Shown here in pieces: positions 1 through 33,077 of a stretch of DNA of 39,656 nt. The position numbers and the translations under genes were made by a program. Source of the DNA: Octopus bimaculoides (lineage: Eukaryota); NCBI RefSeq assembly GCF_001194135.2, contig NC_069001.1, positions 37,183,872-37,223,527 of the forward strand, in the 5' to 3' direction. Below the pieces are notes generated by a model. The model was not told the origin of the DNA, made no database searches, and was given only the letters and a program-made list of their open reading frames with translations. Numbering within the stretch: position 1 is the stretch's first letter; each line of letters opens with the position of its first letter.

Positions 1-1815
1 GTATGGCTTTTCTCCTGTATGAATACGCTTGTGAGTAATTAACTTACTTCTAACAGCAAATGATTTACCACAGATGTTACAGGGATATGGCTTTACTCCT
101 GTATGAATATATTTGTGAGCAGTTAAGTGACTACTAATAGAGAATGATTTACCACAGGTATCACACTGAAATGGCTTCTCCCCAGTATGAAAACGTTTGT
201 GTACTGTTAATTTACTAATCGAAGACATTGATTTACCACAGATGTCACAGTGATATGGCTGTCCTCCTGTATGAATATATTTGTGTATATTCAAGTGACC
301 ACTTCGAGAGAATGATTTACCACAGATATCACAGTGATATGGCTTCTCTCCCGTATGAGAGCGTATATGAGTAGTTAAGATACTACTTTTAGAAAATGAT
401 TTTCCACAGATATCACAATCATATGACCTCTTACTTGTATGAATGCATTTATGTCGAATTAAGGGACCTCTCTGACTAAATGATTTACCACACGTATCGC
501 AGTGATATGGTTTCTCTCCTGTATGAATACGTTTGTGCCTAGTTAACTCACTATTTCTAGAAAAGGATTTACCACAAACATCACAAGGAAACGACTTCTC
601 TACTTTATGGATATGTCTGTGTCTAGAAAGCTCGCTACTTGTAGAGAATGACTTATCACAAATATCACAGTGATAAGTCTTCTCATCTGTATGAATGATT
701 TTGTGTTTATTCAAGTGTCTTTTTGCAGAGAATGATTTATCACAGATATCACAGTGATATGGCTTCTCACCTGTATGAATGCGACCATGGATAGTTAGGG
801 AATTCCTATTAGAGAATGATTTGCTACAGATATCACACTGATATGGTTTCTCACCTGTATGAATACGTACATGAATAGTTAAGTTACTACTTCGAGAAAA
901 TGATTTACCACAGATGTCACAATGATGAGATTTTTCACCTGTAGGAATGCATTTATGTCTAATTAAGTTACCTTTCTGAGTGAATGATTTATCACAGAGA
1001 TCACAGTGATATGGTTTCTCTCCTGTATGAATATGTTTATGTTCAGCTAACTCAGTACTTCCAGAGAATGATTTACCACAGATATCACATAGATGTTGTT
1101 TTTCTTTTGTATGAATATGTTTGTGTCTAGTTAAATCACTACTTCCAGAGAATGATTTACCACAGATATCACAATGATATGGCTTCTCACCTGTATGAAT
1201 GCGTTTGTGCATATTTAAGTCACTACTTGTAGAAGAGGATTTACCACAGATGTCACAATGAAATGGTTTTTCTCCAGTATGAATCCGTTTGTGTTTAGAT
1301 AAATCATCTTTCCGAGAGAATGATTTACCACAGTAATCACAGCAATAAGGTTTTATTCCTGTATGTATGCTTTTGTGAAAAGTCAAGTGAATTCTTTGAG
1401 AGAAGGATTTCCCACAGACTTCACAGTGATATGGCTTCTCTCCTGTGTGAATGATTTTATGTCTAGTTAAGTCACCTCTTGCAGAGAATGATTTGCCACA
1501 GACATCACAGTGATATGGCTTCTCACCAGTATGTATCCGTTTGTGTATAGTCAGTGCATTTTTGTTAGAGATTGCTTTGCCACAGATATCACAATGATGT
1601 GGCTTGTCTCCTGTATGGGTACTACTCTGATCAGTTATGGGACTTGTTTCAGACAGTGATATACCAATGATATCACTGTGTGTAGAATTTCCTCCTTTGT
1701 CTGTTAGCATATCATTAGGAAAATCAATGTCTTCAGACTCTGTTTTTATAGGAATTGGTGTCTCACATAATTCACTTTTAATCACAACTGGTCTCTCACG
1801 TAATTCACATTCCAT
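1..1815 (-). CDS. C2H2 zinc-finger array protein A (3'-partial, at least 19 finger units)
   Basis: Manual translation from ATG at 1815: [28 protein letters not shown]..., then 19 CxxC-x12-HxxxH units with TGEKP-type linkers. 605 codons with no stop down to position 1; unit 8 ends HKCIP (broken). Missing from the ORF track, probably because its stop lies outside the window. Confidence 0.95.
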
Positions 1816-1977: not shown

Positions 1978-3970
1978 CTGAAATAATAGAGAAACAATAA
2001 GACATATAGATGGTACTTAAAACAGAGATTCAACAGCAAAAAATAGTGCTGAATGGCAAATATAAATATTCAGCTCAACAGCTTCACTTTTTAATCTGCT
2101 ACCTTTAATCATAGTGACTACACAAAACCTACATGATCTGCACATATAACACAGACTACAGCTACATCTTTTCATTGTCTAACATTATCTACGTCAAACT
2201 ACAGAATAGTTGGAGATAACATTCAGCTCTCTGACCNNNNNNNNNNNNNNNNNNNNNNNNNNNNNNNNNNNNNNNNNNNNNNNNNNNNNNNNNNNNNNNN
2301 NNNNNNNNNNNNNNNNNNNNNNNNNNNNNNNNNNNNNNNNNNNNNNNNNNNNNNNNNNNNNNNNNNNNNNNNNNNNNNNNNNNNNNNNNNNNNNNNNNNN
2401 NNNNNNNNNNNNNNNNNNNNNNNNNNNNNNNNNNNNNNNNNNNNNNNNNNNNNNNNNNNNNNNNNNNNNNNNNNNNNNNNNNNNNNNNNNNNNNNNNNNN
2501 NNNNNNNNNNNNNNNNNNNNNNNNNNNNNNNNNNNNNNNNNNNNNNNNNNNNNNNNNNNNNNNNNNNNNNNNNNNNNNNNNNNNNNNNNNNNNNNNNNNN
2601 NNNNNNNNNNNNNNNNNNNNNNNNNNNNNNNNNNNNNNNNNNNNNNNNNNNNNNNNNNNNNNNNNNNNNNNNNNNNNNNNNNNNNNNNNNNNNNNNNNNN
2701 NNNNNNNNNNNNNNNNNNNNNNNNNNNNNNNNNNNNNNNNNNNNNNNNNNNNNNNNNNNNNNNNNNNNNNNNNNNNNNNNNNNNNNNNNNNNNNNNNNNN
2801 NNNNNNNNNNNNNNNNNNNNNNNNNNNNNNNNNNNNNNNNNNNNNNNNNNNNNNNNNNNNNNNNNNNNNNNNNNNNNNNNNNNNNNNNNNNNNNNNNNNN
2901 NNNNNNNNNNNNNNNNNNNNNNNNNNNNNNNNNNNNNNNNNNNNNNNNNNNTATAGATGTGAGAACTATGATCCATTACACCTTGATTTTTTGTTGCCGG
3001 GGTGATGCTCTCCCGTTCCACAAGTTCCTATTTAGTCTCGCTTTAGAGTCTGACATTTGTCTTGTAATCAATGACATCGCTGGACAGTTTGCTCACAATG
3101 TATGTGAACGTACCCACTGTATTCAGTCGTTGCCCATTGATAGTAATGGAAGGTTTAGTGTAGAGCTTTCGAGTTAACTGATGCGATTGGCAAGCTGCTC
3201 TTGTCACGAGCATACAGACTTGAGAAGCCAAAAAGACTGCTGCAGCTGAGCAACATATGCATGCCAAGAAAATGAGTCCCATCAGATCCCCAACTACCTC
3301 CATAATTCTCTGTCCACACTGCCAGACAACTTTCTGGATGCGTCTTGTCCTGATCAGTTACCAAAGCGCCCACAAAACCCAACTCCAATCCCACTATGGG
3401 TAGATGGTACTCGTCGATCAGAGGGGCGACTAAAATGAAAATTTAATCCCAGGTCATTTCTGAGTGAGCACACAATATCAAAGGCACTTGATTTAAGTAG
3501 ACTTAAATACATCGTAACTTCGTCACAAAACGTAATTAGATTGAGAGCCAATAAATATATAGTCATGAAATTTATAATCGTCGTGTTTTTCATTAACACA
3601 TTAAAATAAATAACATCCTTCGCTAATCCAAAATATACATCTGAATAGGTGATTGTCATATTTCAGGAAGCCTGTAGCCGACTGTCCACTTACTAATATT
3701 CTAACTAGTCTGTAGATGCACAAAGGTTGAAAACCGGCATTGGAGTAAATAATACAAAATATTCAATATATTATTTTTAAAACTTAAATAGGAATAATTT
3801 ACAGTAACAACAATACCAAACAAATATTAATTGTATTAAAAATATCACCCAATTATAAACAAAGTGGACCCTGCATAGGAACAACACAACAAAAATATGC
3901 AAGTGATATGTTAAATACAAAGATCACCAACAATTATATTGATAGAAGAAAAGATGAAGAAAAAAATACC
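1978..3970 (-). other. predicted 5'-UTR intron of ZNF gene A
   Basis: Minus-strand donor GAG|GTATTT at 3970 and acceptor ttattgtttctctattatttCAG| at 1978, both at equivalent positions in all four paralogs. Confidence 0.65.
2951..3430. mobile_element. RTE-clade LINE 3' remnant with inverted 5' part, inside intron of gene A
   Basis: Minus 3178-2951 reads PSITINGQRLNTVGTFTY..SKLS...KIKV..IVLTS (late RT region). Plus 3182-3430 reads KTAAAEQH...CPHCQTTF..L..LIS (RTE C-terminal end). Confidence 0.7.
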
Positions 3971-11685: not shown

Positions 11686-13864
<2,179 letters not shown>

Positions 13865-20277: not shown

Positions 20278-20558
20278 GACAATTTATCTCACTAACATAC
20301 TTATTTCTTGTTATGTATCGCATAATTTTGGTGGTTATCACACTACTGTACTTTTTTACATGTTCCAATACATTTATAGTTACATATTTCAAAACATTTT
20401 ACATCAAAATATTAGTCTTTCATATGAGTAATTCAGTGATACTTTTGAGAGAATGATTTGCCATACATTGCACAGGGTTAAAGCTGGTCTCCTATATGAA
20501 TATATTTATGAGTTATGTCACAAATTCAAGAGAATGATTCCCCACAGAGAACACAGTC

Positions 20559-23509
<2,951 letters not shown>

Positions 23510-26201: not shown

Positions 26202-26940
26202 ATCATCATTTAACATCCATTTTCCATACTGGTTTGGGTTGGACAGTTTGATTGAAAACCGGTAAGCTGGGGAGCTGCACCAGGTTCCAGTTCTGATTTG
26301 GTATGGTTTCTACAGCTGGATACTGTTCCTAACACCAAACACTCCAAGAGTTAGTAGGTGATTTTATGTGCCACTGGTATGAGTGCCAGTTACAAAACAC
26401 CGGCATCGGCCATGACTGCAATTTCACTTGGCTTCACAGGTCTTCTCAAGCATGGTATATTGCCAAAAGTCTTGGTCATTTGTCACTGCTTCCATGAAGC
26501 CTAAAGTTTGAAGGGTGCTTTTTATGTGCCACCAGCATTAGCCATGACTACAATTTCACTTGCTTTGACAGGCCTTCTCAAGGATGGCATATCGCCAAAG
26601 GTCTCGGTCACTTGTCATCACCTCTGTGAGGCCCAATGTTCAAAGATCATGCTCCACCACCTTGTCCCATGTCTTTCTGGGTCTACCCCTTCCACAGGTT
26701 CCCTCCACTGTTAGAGATCGGCACTTCTTCACCCAACTGTCTTCATCCATATGTATTGCATGACCATACCAGCGTAGTCATCTCTCTTGCGCAGCACATC
26801 TGATGCCTCTTCTGTCCAACTTTTCCCTCAATATGCTTACATTCTGTTGTGCATGCACACTGACATTGCATATCCAGCAAAGCATACTAGATCCATTTCT
26901 TTCAAGCCTATGCATGTCCTCAGCCCATGTTTCACCAGTA
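26202..26940 (-). mobile_element. RTE-clade LINE 3' end
   Basis: Minus translation RLRWYGHAIHMDEDSWVKKCRSLTVEGTCGRGRPRKTWDKVV; (ATC)n tail near 26202. Confidence 0.8.
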
Positions 26941-28116
26941 GAAAATGAAGGAGTATTGATTTTTACATGTGTGATTTGTAGGAGGAAATGTTCAAGTCAT
27001 GCAGGCCTGTTTAGCCATCAAAAAGCCATGGGAATCAACTCCTTATAAATTATGATGCGGCTATTGTTGATAACAGAACACATGCAACTTGTGGAAAGGT
27101 GTGTTGTTCAGTTGGAGGATGAAAAAGACATGTCAAGAGACTTCATACTGTGGCACCAGTTCCTTCTGCCAGCCAGCACAACTGTGCATTATGCAATAAA
27201 ATGAGCAAGCCTATGGTAGTGCTGAAGAGTCATATAAGGGCCTCACTTTGCATTATCAATGACTCATTTCAATGATTCTTTCCAGCAATGGCTTTGCTTG
27301 TACATGATAAAGCAGCCACTGTATGTGTGTGGGTATTACACACACAAATATACTATTTATTAAAGCTGCAAAAAAGATGTTTTCCAGCTTTAATAAACAA
27401 TATATTACCTTTGGTATTTGAGTACTATTTTTTTCCACCCTGTTTTGCATCTATGTGCTTACTTGTGTGTGTATATAAATCAAATAGCATTGCATTTTGC
27501 TTGAAGTGTTATAGTACAGAGGTAGGAAAAGAAAACAAAAATAAAGTGTCTAACAATGCAGAAAGTTTTTTAAAAAAAACTTTTTATTTCAGGTGCAAAG
27601 GCCTATCTTCAGAAGGAAGCAGTCCAAGAAATGCCTAGTTACATTGATTTTGTTATTTTATTTAAACTGCCTGGCAATTGGGTTGGCAGCAACTCTTCAA
27701 CTGTTAGTCATTGTAATGTATTTTCACATAGTAGCGGTGGAAGATGGTGTTAGTGGAATGTTTTATGAAGTCACTATGATGTATTCACAGGAGTCACTGG
27801 CCCATCTGTGATCAACTGTTAATTTTCAAGTTGAGGCAGTGGGTCAATATAGCTTCATTCACACAAGGATTTCCTGTGTTCCTCTCTAAGGGTAGCATGG
27901 ATGCTTCTATCTCTCTAGTGGTGTTGCTGCATTTGGTTAAGTGTTTGCAGAAGGAAGACACATCAGTGGTGAGATGCCCTATTTGCAACTCTAACACATG
28001 CCTACATCTATATGTAGTATACCAAATATGATGCTCCAAATGCAACAACTGTTACAACACTAGCACAGTCCAACCACTCCACATCTGAATGAAGAATGAA
28101 CTTCCATTCCTTTATA

Positions 28117-29639: not shown

Positions 29640-32600
29640 TTATGGTTTCTCTCCTGTATGAATTTGCTTATGAGTAGTTAAGCTACTTCCCTGAGAGAAT
29701 GATTTACCGCAGATATCACAGGCATATGGTTTCTCTCCAGTATGAATGCGTTTATGTGTTATCAAGTAACAACTTCGAGAGAATGATTTACCACAAATAT
29801 CACAGTGGTACGGCTTTTCTCCTGTATGAGTACGCATATGTTTAGCTAACTCACTACTTAGGGCAAATGATTTACCACATATATCACAGAGATATGGTTT
29901 CCCTCCAGTATGAATATATTTGTGAGTAGTTAAGTGACCCCTTCTAGAGAATGATTTACCACAGACGTCACAGTGATATGGTGTGTCACCTGTATGAATA
30001 AATTTGTGAGTAGTTAAGTCACTGCTTTGAGAGAATGATTTCCCGCAGATATCACAGTGATATGGTTTCTCTCCTGTATGAATGCGTTTGTGTACAGTTA
30101 ATTTACTCTTTGAAGTGAATGATTTACTACAAATATCACAAGGATATGGTTTCTCCCCTGTGTGCATACGTTTGTGTATGGTTAGGGCATTACTATGAGA
30201 GAATGATTTACCACAGATATCACAGTGATGTGGTTTCTCTCCTGTATGAATACGTTTATGTTTAGTTAAATCTCCTGTTCGAGAGAATGGTTTACCACAG
30301 ATATTACAATCATATGGTTTCTTCCCTGTATGAATATTTTTATGCATAGTTAAGATATGTTTACGAGTGAATGATTTACTACAAATATCACATTGAAATG
30401 GTTTCTCTCCAGTATGAATACGTATATGACTACTCAAGTCATTGCCTCCAGAGAAGGATTTACCACAGATGTCACAAGGATATGGTTTATCTCCTGTGTG
30501 AATATACTTGTGTCTTGTTAAACTACTACTTCTAGAAAATGATTTACTGCAGATATCACAGTGATATGGCTTCTCTCCTGTATGAATCCGCTTGTGTCTA
30601 CTTAAGTCGTTTCTATGAGAGAATGATTTACCACAAATAGCACATGAAAACGGTTTCTCCCCAGTATGAATGCGTTTATGAGAAATTAAGTAACTACTTC
30701 TATGAAATGATTTACCACAAATATCACATTGATATTTTTCTTGTTCTGTATGAGTATGGTTCTGAGTAGTTAAGGTTTCTGTTTGAGAGAATGATCTACC
30801 ACTGATATTACAGCTATATGGTATCTCTGTTGCATGAATATGCTTGTGATTATTTAAGACATTTCTATGAGAGAATGATTTACCACAGATATCGCAATGA
30901 TATGGCTTCTCTCCAGTATGAATTCGTTCATGTGTAGTTAAGACATCACTTCGAGCAAACTTGTCACCACAAACATCACAGCGATATGGCTTTTCACCTG
31001 TATGTATTCTTTTGTGAGTAGTTAAGTTACTCCTTCCAGAAAATGATTTACCACAAATATCACAGTGATATGGCTTCTCCCTTGTACGAGTACATATATG
31101 GGTAGTTAAGTTATGGTTTTCTAAAAATAATTTACCACAGATATCACAACAATATGGCTTCTCATACCTATGAATGACTTTGTGTATAGTTAAGGCATTT
31201 CTATCAGTGAATGATTTACTACAGTTATCACATGGATAATGCTTCTCTTCGGAATGAATATGTTTGTGACTAGTTAAGGTTCCTGCATGACAGAATGATT
31301 TACCACAGATGTCACATCTATATGACTTCTGTCCTGCATGAATACGTTTGTGTGAAGATAAGACATTTCGATGAGAGAATGATTTACCACAGATATCACA
31401 ATGATATGGCTTCTCCCCTGTATGTATTCGTTCATGTGTAGTTAAGACATCTCTACGGGAGAATGAATTTCCACAAATATCACAGCGATATGGCTTTTCA
31501 CCTGTATGTATTCTTTTGTGAGTAGTTAAGTTACTTCTTCCAGAAAATGATTTACCACAGATATCACAGTGGTATGGCTTTTCTCCTGTATGTGTACGTA
31601 TATGGGTAGTTAAGTTCCGACTTTCCAAAAAAAATTTACCACAGATATCACAATGATACAGCTTCTCATATCTATGTGTGCCTTTGTGTATAGTAAAAGC
31701 AGTTTTATCAGTGAATGATTTGCTACAAAGATCACATGAATATTGCTTTTCTCCTGCATGAATAAATTTGTGTTCAGTTAGGTTATCATCTCCAGAAAAT
31801 GATTTACCACAGATATCACAGTGGTATTGCTTCTCTCCTGTATGAATCTGTTTGTGTTTATTTAATGCATTTCTATCAGAGAAGGATTTACTGCAAATAG
31901 TACATGAATAAGGCTTCTCACCTGTATGAATACGTTTGTGAGTAGTTAATGTTCTTCTTTCAGAGAATGATTTACCACAGATATCACAGTGATATGGTTT
32001 CTCTCCTGTATGTGTACGTTTGTGAGTAATTAAGTGACTACTTCCAGAAAATGACTTACCACAGATATTACAGTGATATGGCTTCTCACCTGTATGAATG
32101 CGCTTGTGTTTATTTAAATCACTCCTTGTAAAGAATGATTTACCACAGATTTCACAGGGAAATGGTTTTTCTCCAGTATGAATGCGTTTATGCTTAGTTA
32201 AGTCTTGATTTCGAGAAAATGATTTACCACAGAAACTACAAGAATATGGTCTTAGTCCCGTATGTATGCTTTTGTGAAAAGTTAAGTGAATTCTTTGAGA
32301 GAATGATTTCCCACAGATTTCACAGTGATAAGGTTTTTCTCCTGTATGAACAATTTTGTGTGTAGTTAAGTGAGCTAGTGCAGAGAATGGTTTACCACAG
32401 ATTTCACAGTGGTATGGTTTTTCTCTTGTATGAACAATCTTGTGTGTAGTTAAGTGAGCTATTGCAGAGAATGATTTTCCACAGACATCACAAGAATATG
32501 GCTTCTCACCTGTATGAATGCTTTTATGTAAAGTTAGATGAATTCTTTGAGAGAAAGATTTACCACAGATATCGCAATATGGTTTCTCACCTGTATGAAT

Positions 32601-33077
32601 GCTTTTATGTATAGTTAAATTATTTCTTTGAGAGAAAGATTTACCACAGATATCACAGTGATATGGCCTTTCCCCTGTATGAGTCCGTTTGTGTACAGTT
32701 AGGGCACTATTTTGAGAGAATGATTTACCACAGATATCACAGTGATATGGCTTTTCTCCAGTATGTATGCGTTTGTGTGTAGTGAGAGCATTTTTGTTAG
32801 AGAATGATTTACCACAGATATCACAATGTGGTTTGTTTTCTGCATGAATAGAACTGTGAGCTGTTTTAGGACTTGTTTCAGAGATTGATATACCAATAAT
32901 ACTACTGTGTGTAGAGGTTTTTTCTGTCTCTTGCTGCAATTCATTATGAAAACCAATCCTTTCAGACTCTGTTTTAATCTTAACTGATGTCTCATATAAT
33001 TCATTTTTAATTATAATTGGTGTCTTGCATAATTCATTTTCAATTTTAATTGGTGTTTCATAGAATTCTTTTTCCAT
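29640..33077 (-). CDS. C2H2 zinc-finger array protein D (38 units, 2 degenerate; 1145 aa)
   Basis: Uninterrupted gap-free ORF. Units 21 (HICTR) and 25 (CNISG..QNHTH) lack zinc ligands. Confidence 0.97.

What the first reader, a model, noticed from the sequence alone, without database searches (positions are those of the whole stretch)
1615..1680. In-register dead zinc finger ('finger 0') converted to a SIM-like hydrophobic motif next to the SUMO sites
Seen: 23 residues from the Lys of KTE, genes A, C and D carry [44 protein letters not shown] (23276-23341) and [22 protein letters not shown] (32844-32909). These align without gaps to [22 protein letters not shown], and the DNA still resembles a finger (cacagtgatatcattggtatatca vs cactgtgatatctgtggtaaatca). 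Both Cys and the Lys are replaced, giving IIGI / IFSI flanked by Ser and acidic residues. Established: SUMO-interacting motifs have a [VI]-[VI]-x-[VIL] core with acidic or phospho-Ser flanks; IIGI fits. Inference: a finger was exapted as a SIM, giving a SUMO-site + SIM pair that could drive oligomerisation. Gene B has an intact finger in exactly this register, most similar to finger 1 of the others, consistent with a clean 84-bp deletion and making it a natural control.
Basis: partly seen in the sequence, partly recalled or inferred. Interest (0 to 1): 0.75.

Follow-up and report, generated by a model that had tools for sequence, protein, structure and literature searches.

The report
Decayed first zinc finger, octopus ZNFs
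Three of four neighbouring octopus zinc-finger genes carry a dead copy of their first zinc finger, which drifts at about the neutral rate; its resemblance to a SUMO-binding motif is no more than chance decay would give, so this is an ordinary relic.

Summary
The window is Octopus bimaculoides chromosomal DNA (GCA_001194135.2). It holds four tandem single-exon C2H2 zinc-finger genes on the minus strand.

At 1615-1680, 23276-23341 and 32844-32909, genes A, C and D encode a 22-residue stretch that aligns gap-free and in register with a C2H2 finger. It matches the local finger consensus at 43-46 of 66 nt (z about 7), and hhalign gives 97.5%, E 6e-12. Both Cys are lost in all three genes, and one His in A and C. 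Pfam does not call it, and AlphaFold predicts it disordered.

Octopus relatives show that this slot is the family's canonical first-finger position. It lies directly after a ~34-aa N-terminal motif. Gene B simply has the family-typical layout.

The SIM reading is not supported:
- omega is 0.61, not different from 1 (p=0.36) but above real fingers (0.20, p=0.02).
- Nucleotide divergence equals that of the non-coding flanks.
- Neutral simulation reproduces both the 9 invariant columns and the '2 of 3 copies keep the core' outcome.
- Gene C (IFSI) fails the V/I/L SIM pattern used here.
- The Ser flanks are inherited finger residues.
- A SIM-like core arises in about 15% of simulated decayed fingers.

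Verdict: a near-neutrally drifting degenerate finger serving as linker. SIM exaptation remains untested biochemically and is unlikely.

The parts
1615..1680 (-). Gene A finger 0: decayed C2H2 finger ([22 protein letters not shown]). Both Cys and His-1 are lost.
1660..1671 (-). Gene A I-I-G-I (ATC ATT GGT ATA), the proposed SIM core. It derives from the I-C-G-K of the finger.
1597..1614 (-). Gene A relic linker TGDKPH between finger 0 and finger 1 (canonical TGEKPY).
1681..1815 (-). Gene A N-terminal motif. Two 11-aa units (V-I-K-S-E, P-I-K-T-E) followed by IDFPND...GNST.
1..1596 (-). Gene A array of intact fingers (84-bp period). The 3' end is cut by the window start.
23276..23341 (-). Gene C finger 0 ([22 protein letters not shown]). 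Both Cys and His-2 are lost. The core is I-F-S-I.
23342..23509 (-). Gene C N-terminal motif with three 33-bp/11-aa units.
32844..32909 (-). Gene D finger 0 ([22 protein letters not shown]). Both Cys are lost and both His are kept.
32829..32843 (-). Gene D relic linker AENKP, one codon shorter than in A and C.
32910..33077 (-). Gene D N-terminal motif with three 11-aa units. The annotated product equals this ORF (1145 aa).
13673..13738 (-). Gene B intact first finger ([22 protein letters not shown]) in the same register as finger 0.
13739..13840 (-). Gene B N-terminal motif with a single unit, which is the family-typical form.

Best explanation
Finger 0 is the decayed first zinc finger of a lineage-specific octopus C2H2-ZNF subfamily.

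Shown:
- The family layout is a ~34-residue N-terminal motif (ME[ND]ELCE...[VI]K.E...IDFPD...KTSY) followed immediately by the finger array.
- Finger 0 occupies the first-finger slot.
- It has lost both zinc-binding Cys in all three copies, plus one His in A and C.
- It is not recognised by Pfam finger models and is predicted to be unstructured.

Inferred:
- The finger died once, in the common ancestor of genes A, C and D. This was after, or at, their split from gene B, which keeps the standard layout.
- It has since drifted at about the neutral rate.
- It stays open only because a stop or frameshift would cut off the downstream DNA-binding array.
- Functionally it is a flexible Ser/Thr/Ile-rich linker between the N-terminal motif and the first working finger.
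- The I-I-G-I string is a by-product of decay: TGT (Cys) to ATT or TTT, and AAA (Lys) to ATA, beside the pre-existing Ile of D-I-C-G-K. The neighbouring Ser residues are the S-x-S of the original G-K-S-F-S.
For: - Source and gene model: O. bimaculoides CM046621.1. The annotated product of D equals the single-exon ORF.
- Relic finger: 43-46 of 66 nt match the finger consensus, z about 7. hhalign gives 97.5%, E 6e-12, gap-free over 28 columns.
- Dead: there is no Pfam finger hit for A, C or D, while B's finger scores above the PF00096 cut-off. In the AlphaFold model of A 1-241, residues 1-69 have pLDDT <50 and no secondary structure, while the real fingers score 81-89 as beta-beta-alpha.
- First-finger slot: 14 O. 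bimaculoides / O. sinensis relatives have the first finger directly after ...KTSY. This is in the same register as [12 protein letters not shown] in D.
- Near-neutral drift: Nei-Gojobori omega is 0.46-0.86 for finger 0 against 0.10-0.23 for real fingers. ML omega is 0.61, with p=0.36 against 1 and p=0.023 (0.006 with linker) against the real-finger value of 0.20. Finger-0 nucleotide divergence is 14-15 of 66, the same as the upstream non-coding DNA at 0.21-0.27.
- Neutral simulation reproduces the 9 invariant columns, a 20% chance that all four hydrophobic positions stay hydrophobic, and '2 of 3 keep the core' as the modal outcome.
- Recurrence: the first finger is non-canonical in 8 of 13 scorable relatives, each broken differently.
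- Degenerate non-functional fingers inside ZNF ORFs are documented for KRAB-ZNFs (PMC2865497).
Against: - Only three copies of 22 codons were available, so the tests have little power. The point estimate of omega (0.61) is below 1, and weak constraint cannot be excluded.
- The four hydrophobic positions are hydrophobic in all three copies, and there are no indels within the 22 codons.
- No orthologues or further paralogues carrying finger 0 could be retrieved.
- The retrieved relatives are cluster representatives and automated gene models. They are probably enriched for divergent or decaying genes: 15 of 44 of their later fingers are also non-canonical.
- SUMO binding was not and could not be tested here.
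Confidence: 0.8

Rival explanations
1. The dead finger was exapted as a SUMO-interacting motif (I-I-G-I with Ser/acidic flanks). Together with the I-K-x-E sites 22 residues upstream, it would drive SUMO-dependent self-association or cofactor recruitment.
For: - A and D match [VI][VI]x[VIL], followed by S-[LI]-S-E-T-S.
- The region is predicted disordered, as most SIMs are (PMC12751080).
- SIMs are defined loosely, as at least 3 hydrophobic residues out of a 4-residue core. I-F-S-I in C could qualify under the loosest definition.
- The hydrophobic positions are kept in all three copies.
- Strong SUMO-consensus sites lie upstream and have been multiplied by 33-bp tandem duplication.
Against: - omega is not different from 1, and divergence equals that of non-coding DNA.
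- Neutral simulation reproduces the conservation seen.
- C fails the V/I/L pattern.
- Gly at the variable position disfavours the beta-strand that a SIM must form. This rests on my own knowledge and was not tested.
- The Ser flanks are inherited from GKSFS.
- The motif arises by chance in 15-17% of decayed fingers (about 3% with flanks) and in 32% (5%) of stop-free intergenic 22-mers.
- It is absent from B and from every other family member retrieved.
- The octopus genome has on the order of a thousand or more ZNF genes (PMC10547256), so such coincidences are expected.
Confidence: 0.07
2. Finger 0 is weakly constrained for a role other than SUMO binding. It could be a spacer of fixed length, or a Ser/Thr-rich phospho-regulated linker, between the N-terminal motif and the array.
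For: - The omega point estimate is 0.61-0.68, below 1.
- There are no indels within the 22 codons in three copies, while the upstream non-coding alignment is full of gaps.
- T-x-P-x-T and S positions are invariant.
Against: - The deviation from omega = 1 is not significant.
- D has lost a codon in the relic linker, so length is not strictly kept.
- B functions, presumably, without it.
- The in-frame requirement alone removes most indels.
Confidence: 0.12
3. History variant. Finger 0 was already dead in the common ancestor of all four genes, and gene B later lost it by a clean 84-bp (one-unit) deletion.
For: - B's first finger shares the x-K-x-A-L-T-x-H helix type with F1 (and F2) of A, C and D.
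- Unit-wise gain and loss is evidently frequent. The number of fingers between the N-terminus and the QRIHLTFH finger is 2, 5 and 6 in A, C and D.
Against: - B is the outgroup by non-coding flank divergence (0.30-0.34 against 0.21-0.27).
- B has the layout of all more distant relatives: one N-terminal unit, with the finger directly after KTxx. No deletion needs to be invoked.
- B's F1 is closest in DNA to D's F2 and F3, not to the F1s.
- Finger 0 is equidistant from all fingers, at 19-31 differences.
Confidence: 0.3

Closest known systems
Degenerate (non-zinc-binding) fingers inside tandem C2H2/KRAB-ZNF open reading frames
   Same: A finger unit that keeps the 28-codon register and linker remnants but has lost zinc ligands. 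It sits inside an otherwise intact array-bearing ORF in a tandemly duplicated gene cluster. Such degenerate non-functional fingers are described for mammalian KRAB-ZNF clusters (PMC2865497).
   Different: This one is in an octopus-specific family with a different N-terminal motif. It is the first unit of the array, and all three copies descend from one decay event.
SUMO-interacting motifs, e.g. the tandem N-terminal SIMs of the zinc-finger protein ZNF451 (PDB 5D2M; PMC12751080)
   Same: A short Ile-rich stretch with Ser/acidic neighbours, in a predicted disordered N-terminal region of a zinc-finger protein.
   Different: - There is no evidence of binding.
- Gly is at the variable position.
- One of three copies lacks the V/I/L core.
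- Evolution is near-neutral.
- The flanking Ser residues are inherited finger residues rather than an acquired acidic or phospho stretch.
Lineage-specific N-terminal ZNF-associated motifs (FiNZ in cyprinid fish, KRAB in tetrapods; PMC10547256)
   Same: A short, Glu-rich, lineage-restricted N-terminal motif preceding a long finger array, in a massively expanded, tandemly clustered family.
   Different: - There is no sequence similarity to FiNZ or KRAB (no Pfam hit).
- The motif and the array are in one exon here.
- The function is untested.

Membership tests
C2H2 zinc finger (Pfam PF00096) | Four zinc ligands C-x2-4-C-x12-H-x3-5-H | tested here: not met
   Both Cys are replaced in A, C and D. 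His-1 is lost in A and His-2 in C.
C2H2 zinc finger (Pfam PF00096) | Match to the curated family HMM | tested here: not met
   No Pfam hit at E<=10 for the A, C or D N-termini including finger 0. B's finger scores 27.2 bits against a cut-off of 25.2.
C2H2 zinc finger (Pfam PF00096) | Descent from a finger (homology in register with the array) | tested here: met
   43-46 of 66 nt match the consensus, z about 7. hhalign gives 97.5%, E 6e-12, 28/28 columns. So it is a relic of the family, not a working member.
C2H2 zinc finger (Pfam PF00096) | beta-beta-alpha fold | tested here: not met
   In the AlphaFold2 model, residues 1-69 have pLDDT <50 and no secondary structure. The neighbouring fingers are confidently folded. 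This is a prediction only.
SUMO-interacting motif (SIM) | Four-residue core with at least three V/I/L-type hydrophobic residues | tested here: inconclusive
   A and D have I-I-G-I, which fits [VI][VI]x[VIL]. C has I-F-S-I, which fails the V/I/L patterns and fits only the loosest definition (definition from PMC12751080).
SUMO-interacting motif (SIM) | Adjacent acidic or phosphorylatable stretch | tested here: inconclusive
   S-[LI]-S-[EQ]-T-[SN] follows the core. These are the inherited S-F-S-x-x-S positions of the finger, interrupted by a hydrophobic residue.
SUMO-interacting motif (SIM) | Conservation above the neutral expectation | tested here: not met
   omega is 0.61 with p=0.36 against 1. 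Divergence equals that of the non-coding flanks. Neutral simulation matches the observed conservation. Power is low (3 x 22 codons).
SUMO-interacting motif (SIM) | Non-covalent binding to the SUMO groove | not testable with these tools
   This needs a complex prediction with octopus SUMO, or a binding assay.
Octopus ZNF family with the ME[ND]ELCE...IDFPD...KTSY N-terminal motif (unnamed) | ~34-aa N-terminal motif directly followed by the finger array | tested here: met
   The profile of the A-D N-termini retrieves O. bimaculoides and O. sinensis ZNFs aligned from residue 1 (E 1e-14 to 1e-6). All have the first finger in the finger-0 register.
SUMOylation consensus site (psi-K-x-E) | Hydrophobic residue - Lys - any - Glu | tested here: met
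   The sites are V-I-K-S-E and P-I-K-T-E (A), I-I-K-T-E (B), three in C and two in D. The motif is present in only about 5 of 14 more distant relatives. Modification itself was not tested.

The most novel reading that the evidence does not exclude
The decayed first finger has been co-opted as a short linear motif, either a SIM or another beta-strand-forming Ile/Ser stretch. It would work together with the tandemly multiplied I-K-x-E SUMO-consensus units of the N-terminal motif. Genes A, C and D would then gain SUMO-dependent self-association or cofactor recruitment that gene B lacks. That would be an example of a DNA-binding module recycled into a protein-interaction motif within a young gene cluster.
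Probability: 0.07. Interest if true: 0.5.

Novelty: new member of a known kind. Interest (0 to 1): 0.15.

Why it matters
If the SIM idea were true, it would show a zinc finger being recycled into a SUMO-binding peptide. It would also give a first mechanistic handle on how the huge, uncharacterised octopus ZNF expansion recruits cofactors.

As the evidence stands, the feature is a routine by-product of birth-and-death evolution in tandem finger arrays, so it matters little in itself.

The more useful by-product is the family context: a conserved, unannotated ~34-residue N-terminal motif shared by many octopus ZNFs. In this cluster its SUMO-consensus unit has been multiplied by 33-bp tandem duplication. 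That motif, not finger 0, is the better candidate for an effector element.

Tried and rejected
- Word-index protein searches with the A N-terminus and with the A-D N-terminal alignment found nothing. Gene D's protein is not in that collection.
- A longer profile (N-terminus to seven fingers) was swamped by generic ZNFs from vertebrates and insects and gave no finger-0-bearing relatives.
- The locus fetched around gene D extends past the window only as masked N, so no further paralogues could be reached.
- No other finger-0-like DNA exists in the window at up to 18 mismatches.
- Attempts to tie finger 0 to a particular parent finger failed. It is 19-31 differences from all of them.
- An engrailed-homology-1 (F-x-I-x-x-I-L) reading of C's F-S-I-S-I-S was considered and rejected by inspection, because positions 6 and 7 do not fit.
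- tRNA, Rfam and intergenic ORF scans found nothing relevant.
- The two papers on cephalopod and metazoan ZNF expansions do not describe the N-terminal motif, degenerate fingers or SUMO in octopus.

Full report
**What the window is**

A look-up of the complete 1145-aa ORF at 29640-33077(-) places it in Octopus bimaculoides assembly GCA_001194135.2, chromosome record CM046621.1, at about 37.2 Mb. The annotated product there is identical to the single-exon ORF.

The window holds four tandem C2H2 zinc-finger genes on the minus strand:
- A: 1-1815, with its 3' end cut by the window.
- B: 11686-13840, with a 10-N gap.
- C: 20849-23509, with an N gap near the 3' end.
- D: 29640-33077.

There are 107 canonical fingers in all. 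Tandem Repeats Finder sees the 84-bp arrays stop just where finger 0 begins.

**Checking the observation**

In all four genes the first His of the unit lies 22 residues after the Lys of I-K-T-E.

Several tests show the stretch is a relic finger:
- Against the consensus DNA of 103 real fingers, finger 0 matches 46 (A), 43 (C) and 43 (D) of 66 positions without gaps. Real fingers match 47-59.
- Intergenic 66-mers of the same window average 18.1 (sd 3.7, max 41, n=53,008). Shuffles never exceed 35.
- A profile of finger 0 plus its linker aligns to a profile of 22 real fingers over all 28 columns, with 97.5% probability and E 6e-12.
- In the exhaustive profile search, the finger-0 columns repeatedly aligned to real fingers of octopus ZNF arrays.

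So the unit is a relic finger, in register, with a relic linker (TGDKPH, RGDKPY, AENKP).

It is dead:
- Both Cys are gone in all three copies. His-1 is gone in A and His-2 in C.
- Pfam finds no finger there, although it finds B's.
- An AlphaFold2 model of A 1-241 leaves residues 1-69 at pLDDT <50 with no secondary structure. The six real fingers fold at pLDDT 81-89.

**Family context**

A profile of the four N-termini, searched against 1.84 billion representatives, retrieved O. bimaculoides and O. sinensis ZNFs. Their first ~34 residues read ME[ND]ELCE...[VI]K.E...[ID]F[PS]D...K[TI]SY and are followed at once by the first finger.

Lined up on that finger, [13 protein letters not shown] in the relatives corresponds to [13 protein letters not shown] in [15 protein letters not shown] in D and [14 protein letters not shown] in A. 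Finger 0 is therefore the family's first finger, decayed in place, or a decayed duplicate in that slot. Gene B simply has the standard layout: one N-terminal unit and an intact first finger.

Among the 13 relatives whose first finger can be scored, 8 have a non-canonical one, each broken differently: ligand substitutions in P0009, and internal deletions or insertions in P0002, P0003, P0012, P0014, P0026, P0027 and P0048. Later fingers in these gene models are also non-canonical in 15 of 44 cases. The sample is made of divergent cluster representatives, so I take this only as evidence that finger decay is common in the family.

**History**

The non-coding DNA upstream of the four start codons is alignable. 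Divergence is 0.21-0.27 among A, C and D (C-D closest) and 0.30-0.34 to B, so B is the outgroup.

A, C and D share derived states: the dead finger, and extra 33-bp/11-aa N-terminal units (2, 3 and 3 copies against 1 in B and in the wider family). The simplest history is one decay event in the A/C/D ancestor.

The number of fingers before the QRIHLTFH finger is 2, 5 and 6 in A, C and D. But it is not needed. Its supporting claim is also weak: B's first finger is closest in DNA to D's finger 2 (9 differences) and finger 3 (11), not to the F1s (15-17). Finger 0 is equidistant from all fingers, at 19-31 differences.

**Is finger 0 under selection?**

- Pairwise Nei-Gojobori omega is 0.46-0.86 for finger 0, 0.10-0.23 for real fingers and 1.0-1.7 for the N-terminal segment just upstream.
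- A three-taxon maximum-likelihood codon model gives omega 0.61 for finger 0. The LRT against omega = 1 gives p=0.36.
- Finger 1 gives 0.15 and four orthologous fingers give 0.21, both p<0.001 against 1.
- Finger 0 rejects the real-finger value of 0.20 (p=0.023, or 0.006 with the linker).
- Its raw nucleotide divergence (14-15 of 66, or 0.21-0.23) equals that of the non-coding flanks.

I simulated strictly neutral codon evolution from the majority-rule ancestor along those branch lengths. The lengths agree with the independent flank divergence. The results were:
- 9.0+-2.3 invariant columns expected, 9 observed.
- A 20% chance that all four hydrophobic positions stay hydrophobic in all three copies. 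Ile is mutationally robust: by my own count, 6 of the 9 single-base neighbours of ATT are hydrophobic.
- '2 of 3 copies keep a V/I/L core' as the single most likely outcome (41%), which is exactly what is seen.

Power is low with 3 x 22 codons. Weak constraint cannot be excluded, but nothing needs it.

**Is it a SIM?**

A current review defines the SIM as a loose motif: a four-residue core with at least three hydrophobic residues, preferably V/L/I, helped by acidic or phosphorylatable neighbours, and usually in disordered regions (PMC12751080).
- A and D (I-I-G-I) fit [VI][VI]x[VIL]. C (I-F-S-I) does not.
- The flanking Ser residues are the S-x-S of the finger's G-K-S-F-S.
- The Ile residues come from the original D-I plus TGT to ATT or TTT and AAA to ATA.
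- When real fingers are decayed in silico to the observed 20-23 differences with the local base composition, 15-17% acquire a loose SIM core and about 3% a core with a Ser/acid-rich flank.
- Among stop-free intergenic 22-mers the figures are 32% and 5%.
- The pattern was found post hoc in a genome with on the order of a thousand or more ZNF genes (PMC10547256).
- By the Pro-tolerant SIM pattern that I recall from the literature, the N-terminal units themselves (P-V-V-I, P-I-I-I, P-I-V-I) would also score. This illustrates how little the match means.
- Gly at the variable position is, to my knowledge, unfavourable for the beta-strand a SIM must form.

**Conclusion**

The best explanation is an ordinary degenerate finger, of the kind documented inside mammalian KRAB-ZNF ORFs (PMC2865497). 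It persists as a disordered linker because it lies in frame upstream of a working array.

I rate SIM function at about 7%, some other weak constraint at about 12%, and neutral relic at about 80%.

**What could not be done**

No orthologues or further finger-0 paralogues could be retrieved. No SUMO complex could be modelled. These are the decisive next steps.

Noticed in passing
window 23404-23505 and 32972-33073 (- strand coding); also 1750-1815 in gene A: A 33-bp tandem repeat (3.1 copies in C and D, 2 units in A, 1 in B) encodes the 11-aa unit N-E-L-C-E-T-P-I-x-I-K. Each unit junction creates an I-K-x-E SUMO-consensus site preceded by a hydrophobic cluster. The site number has therefore grown by tandem duplication in this cluster.
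   Followed up: partly
window 13739-13840, 1681-1815, 23342-23509, 32910-33077 (-); relatives P0001-P0051: A ~34-aa N-terminal motif, ME[ND]ELCE...[VI]K.E...IDFPD...KTSY, is shared by ZNFs of O. bimaculoides and O. sinensis. It has no Pfam match and is not mentioned in the two cephalopod/metazoan ZNF papers checked. It is a candidate lineage-specific effector motif, analogous in position to KRAB or FiNZ.
   Followed up: partly
window about 1940-1995 (gene A) and the equivalent positions upstream of B, C and D (alignment A3, columns 183-300): A conserved non-coding block containing TTATTTCAG lies about 130-180 nt upstream of gene A's ATG, at homologous positions upstream of B, C and D (farther, because of indels). 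It is probably a splice acceptor at the start of the coding exon or 5'UTR, or a regulatory element.
   Followed up: no
window 20511-20920: The 84-bp finger array of gene C continues beyond the N gap (20929-21056) in another frame, down to about 20511. The stop at 20849 and the odd C-terminal tail are therefore probably artefacts of the assembly gap.
   Followed up: no
gene D aa 79-84 (32826-32843) and aa 163-168; gene C near '...[14 protein letters not shown]': Several inter-finger linkers are one codon short ([22 protein letters not shown]). These in-frame deletions break the canonical 7-residue linker and may split the arrays into sub-arrays.
   Followed up: no
window about 3300-3395 (+) and 26803-27048 (+): Short ORF tails carry a CxxC...H...H motif (LCPHCQTTF...HKTQLQSHYG, and CVICRRKCSSHAGLFSHQKA). 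They resemble the C-terminal zinc knuckle of LINE ORF2 proteins and are probably retroelement fragments between the ZNF genes. This is judged from memory and was not tested.
   Followed up: no
relatives P0016 (HCDIYGISFS, HCDICGISFS): The Lys-to-Ile change of G-K-S to G-I-S, seen in finger 0, also occurs in otherwise intact fingers of another octopus ZNF. That substitution alone is not peculiar to the dead finger.
   Followed up: no
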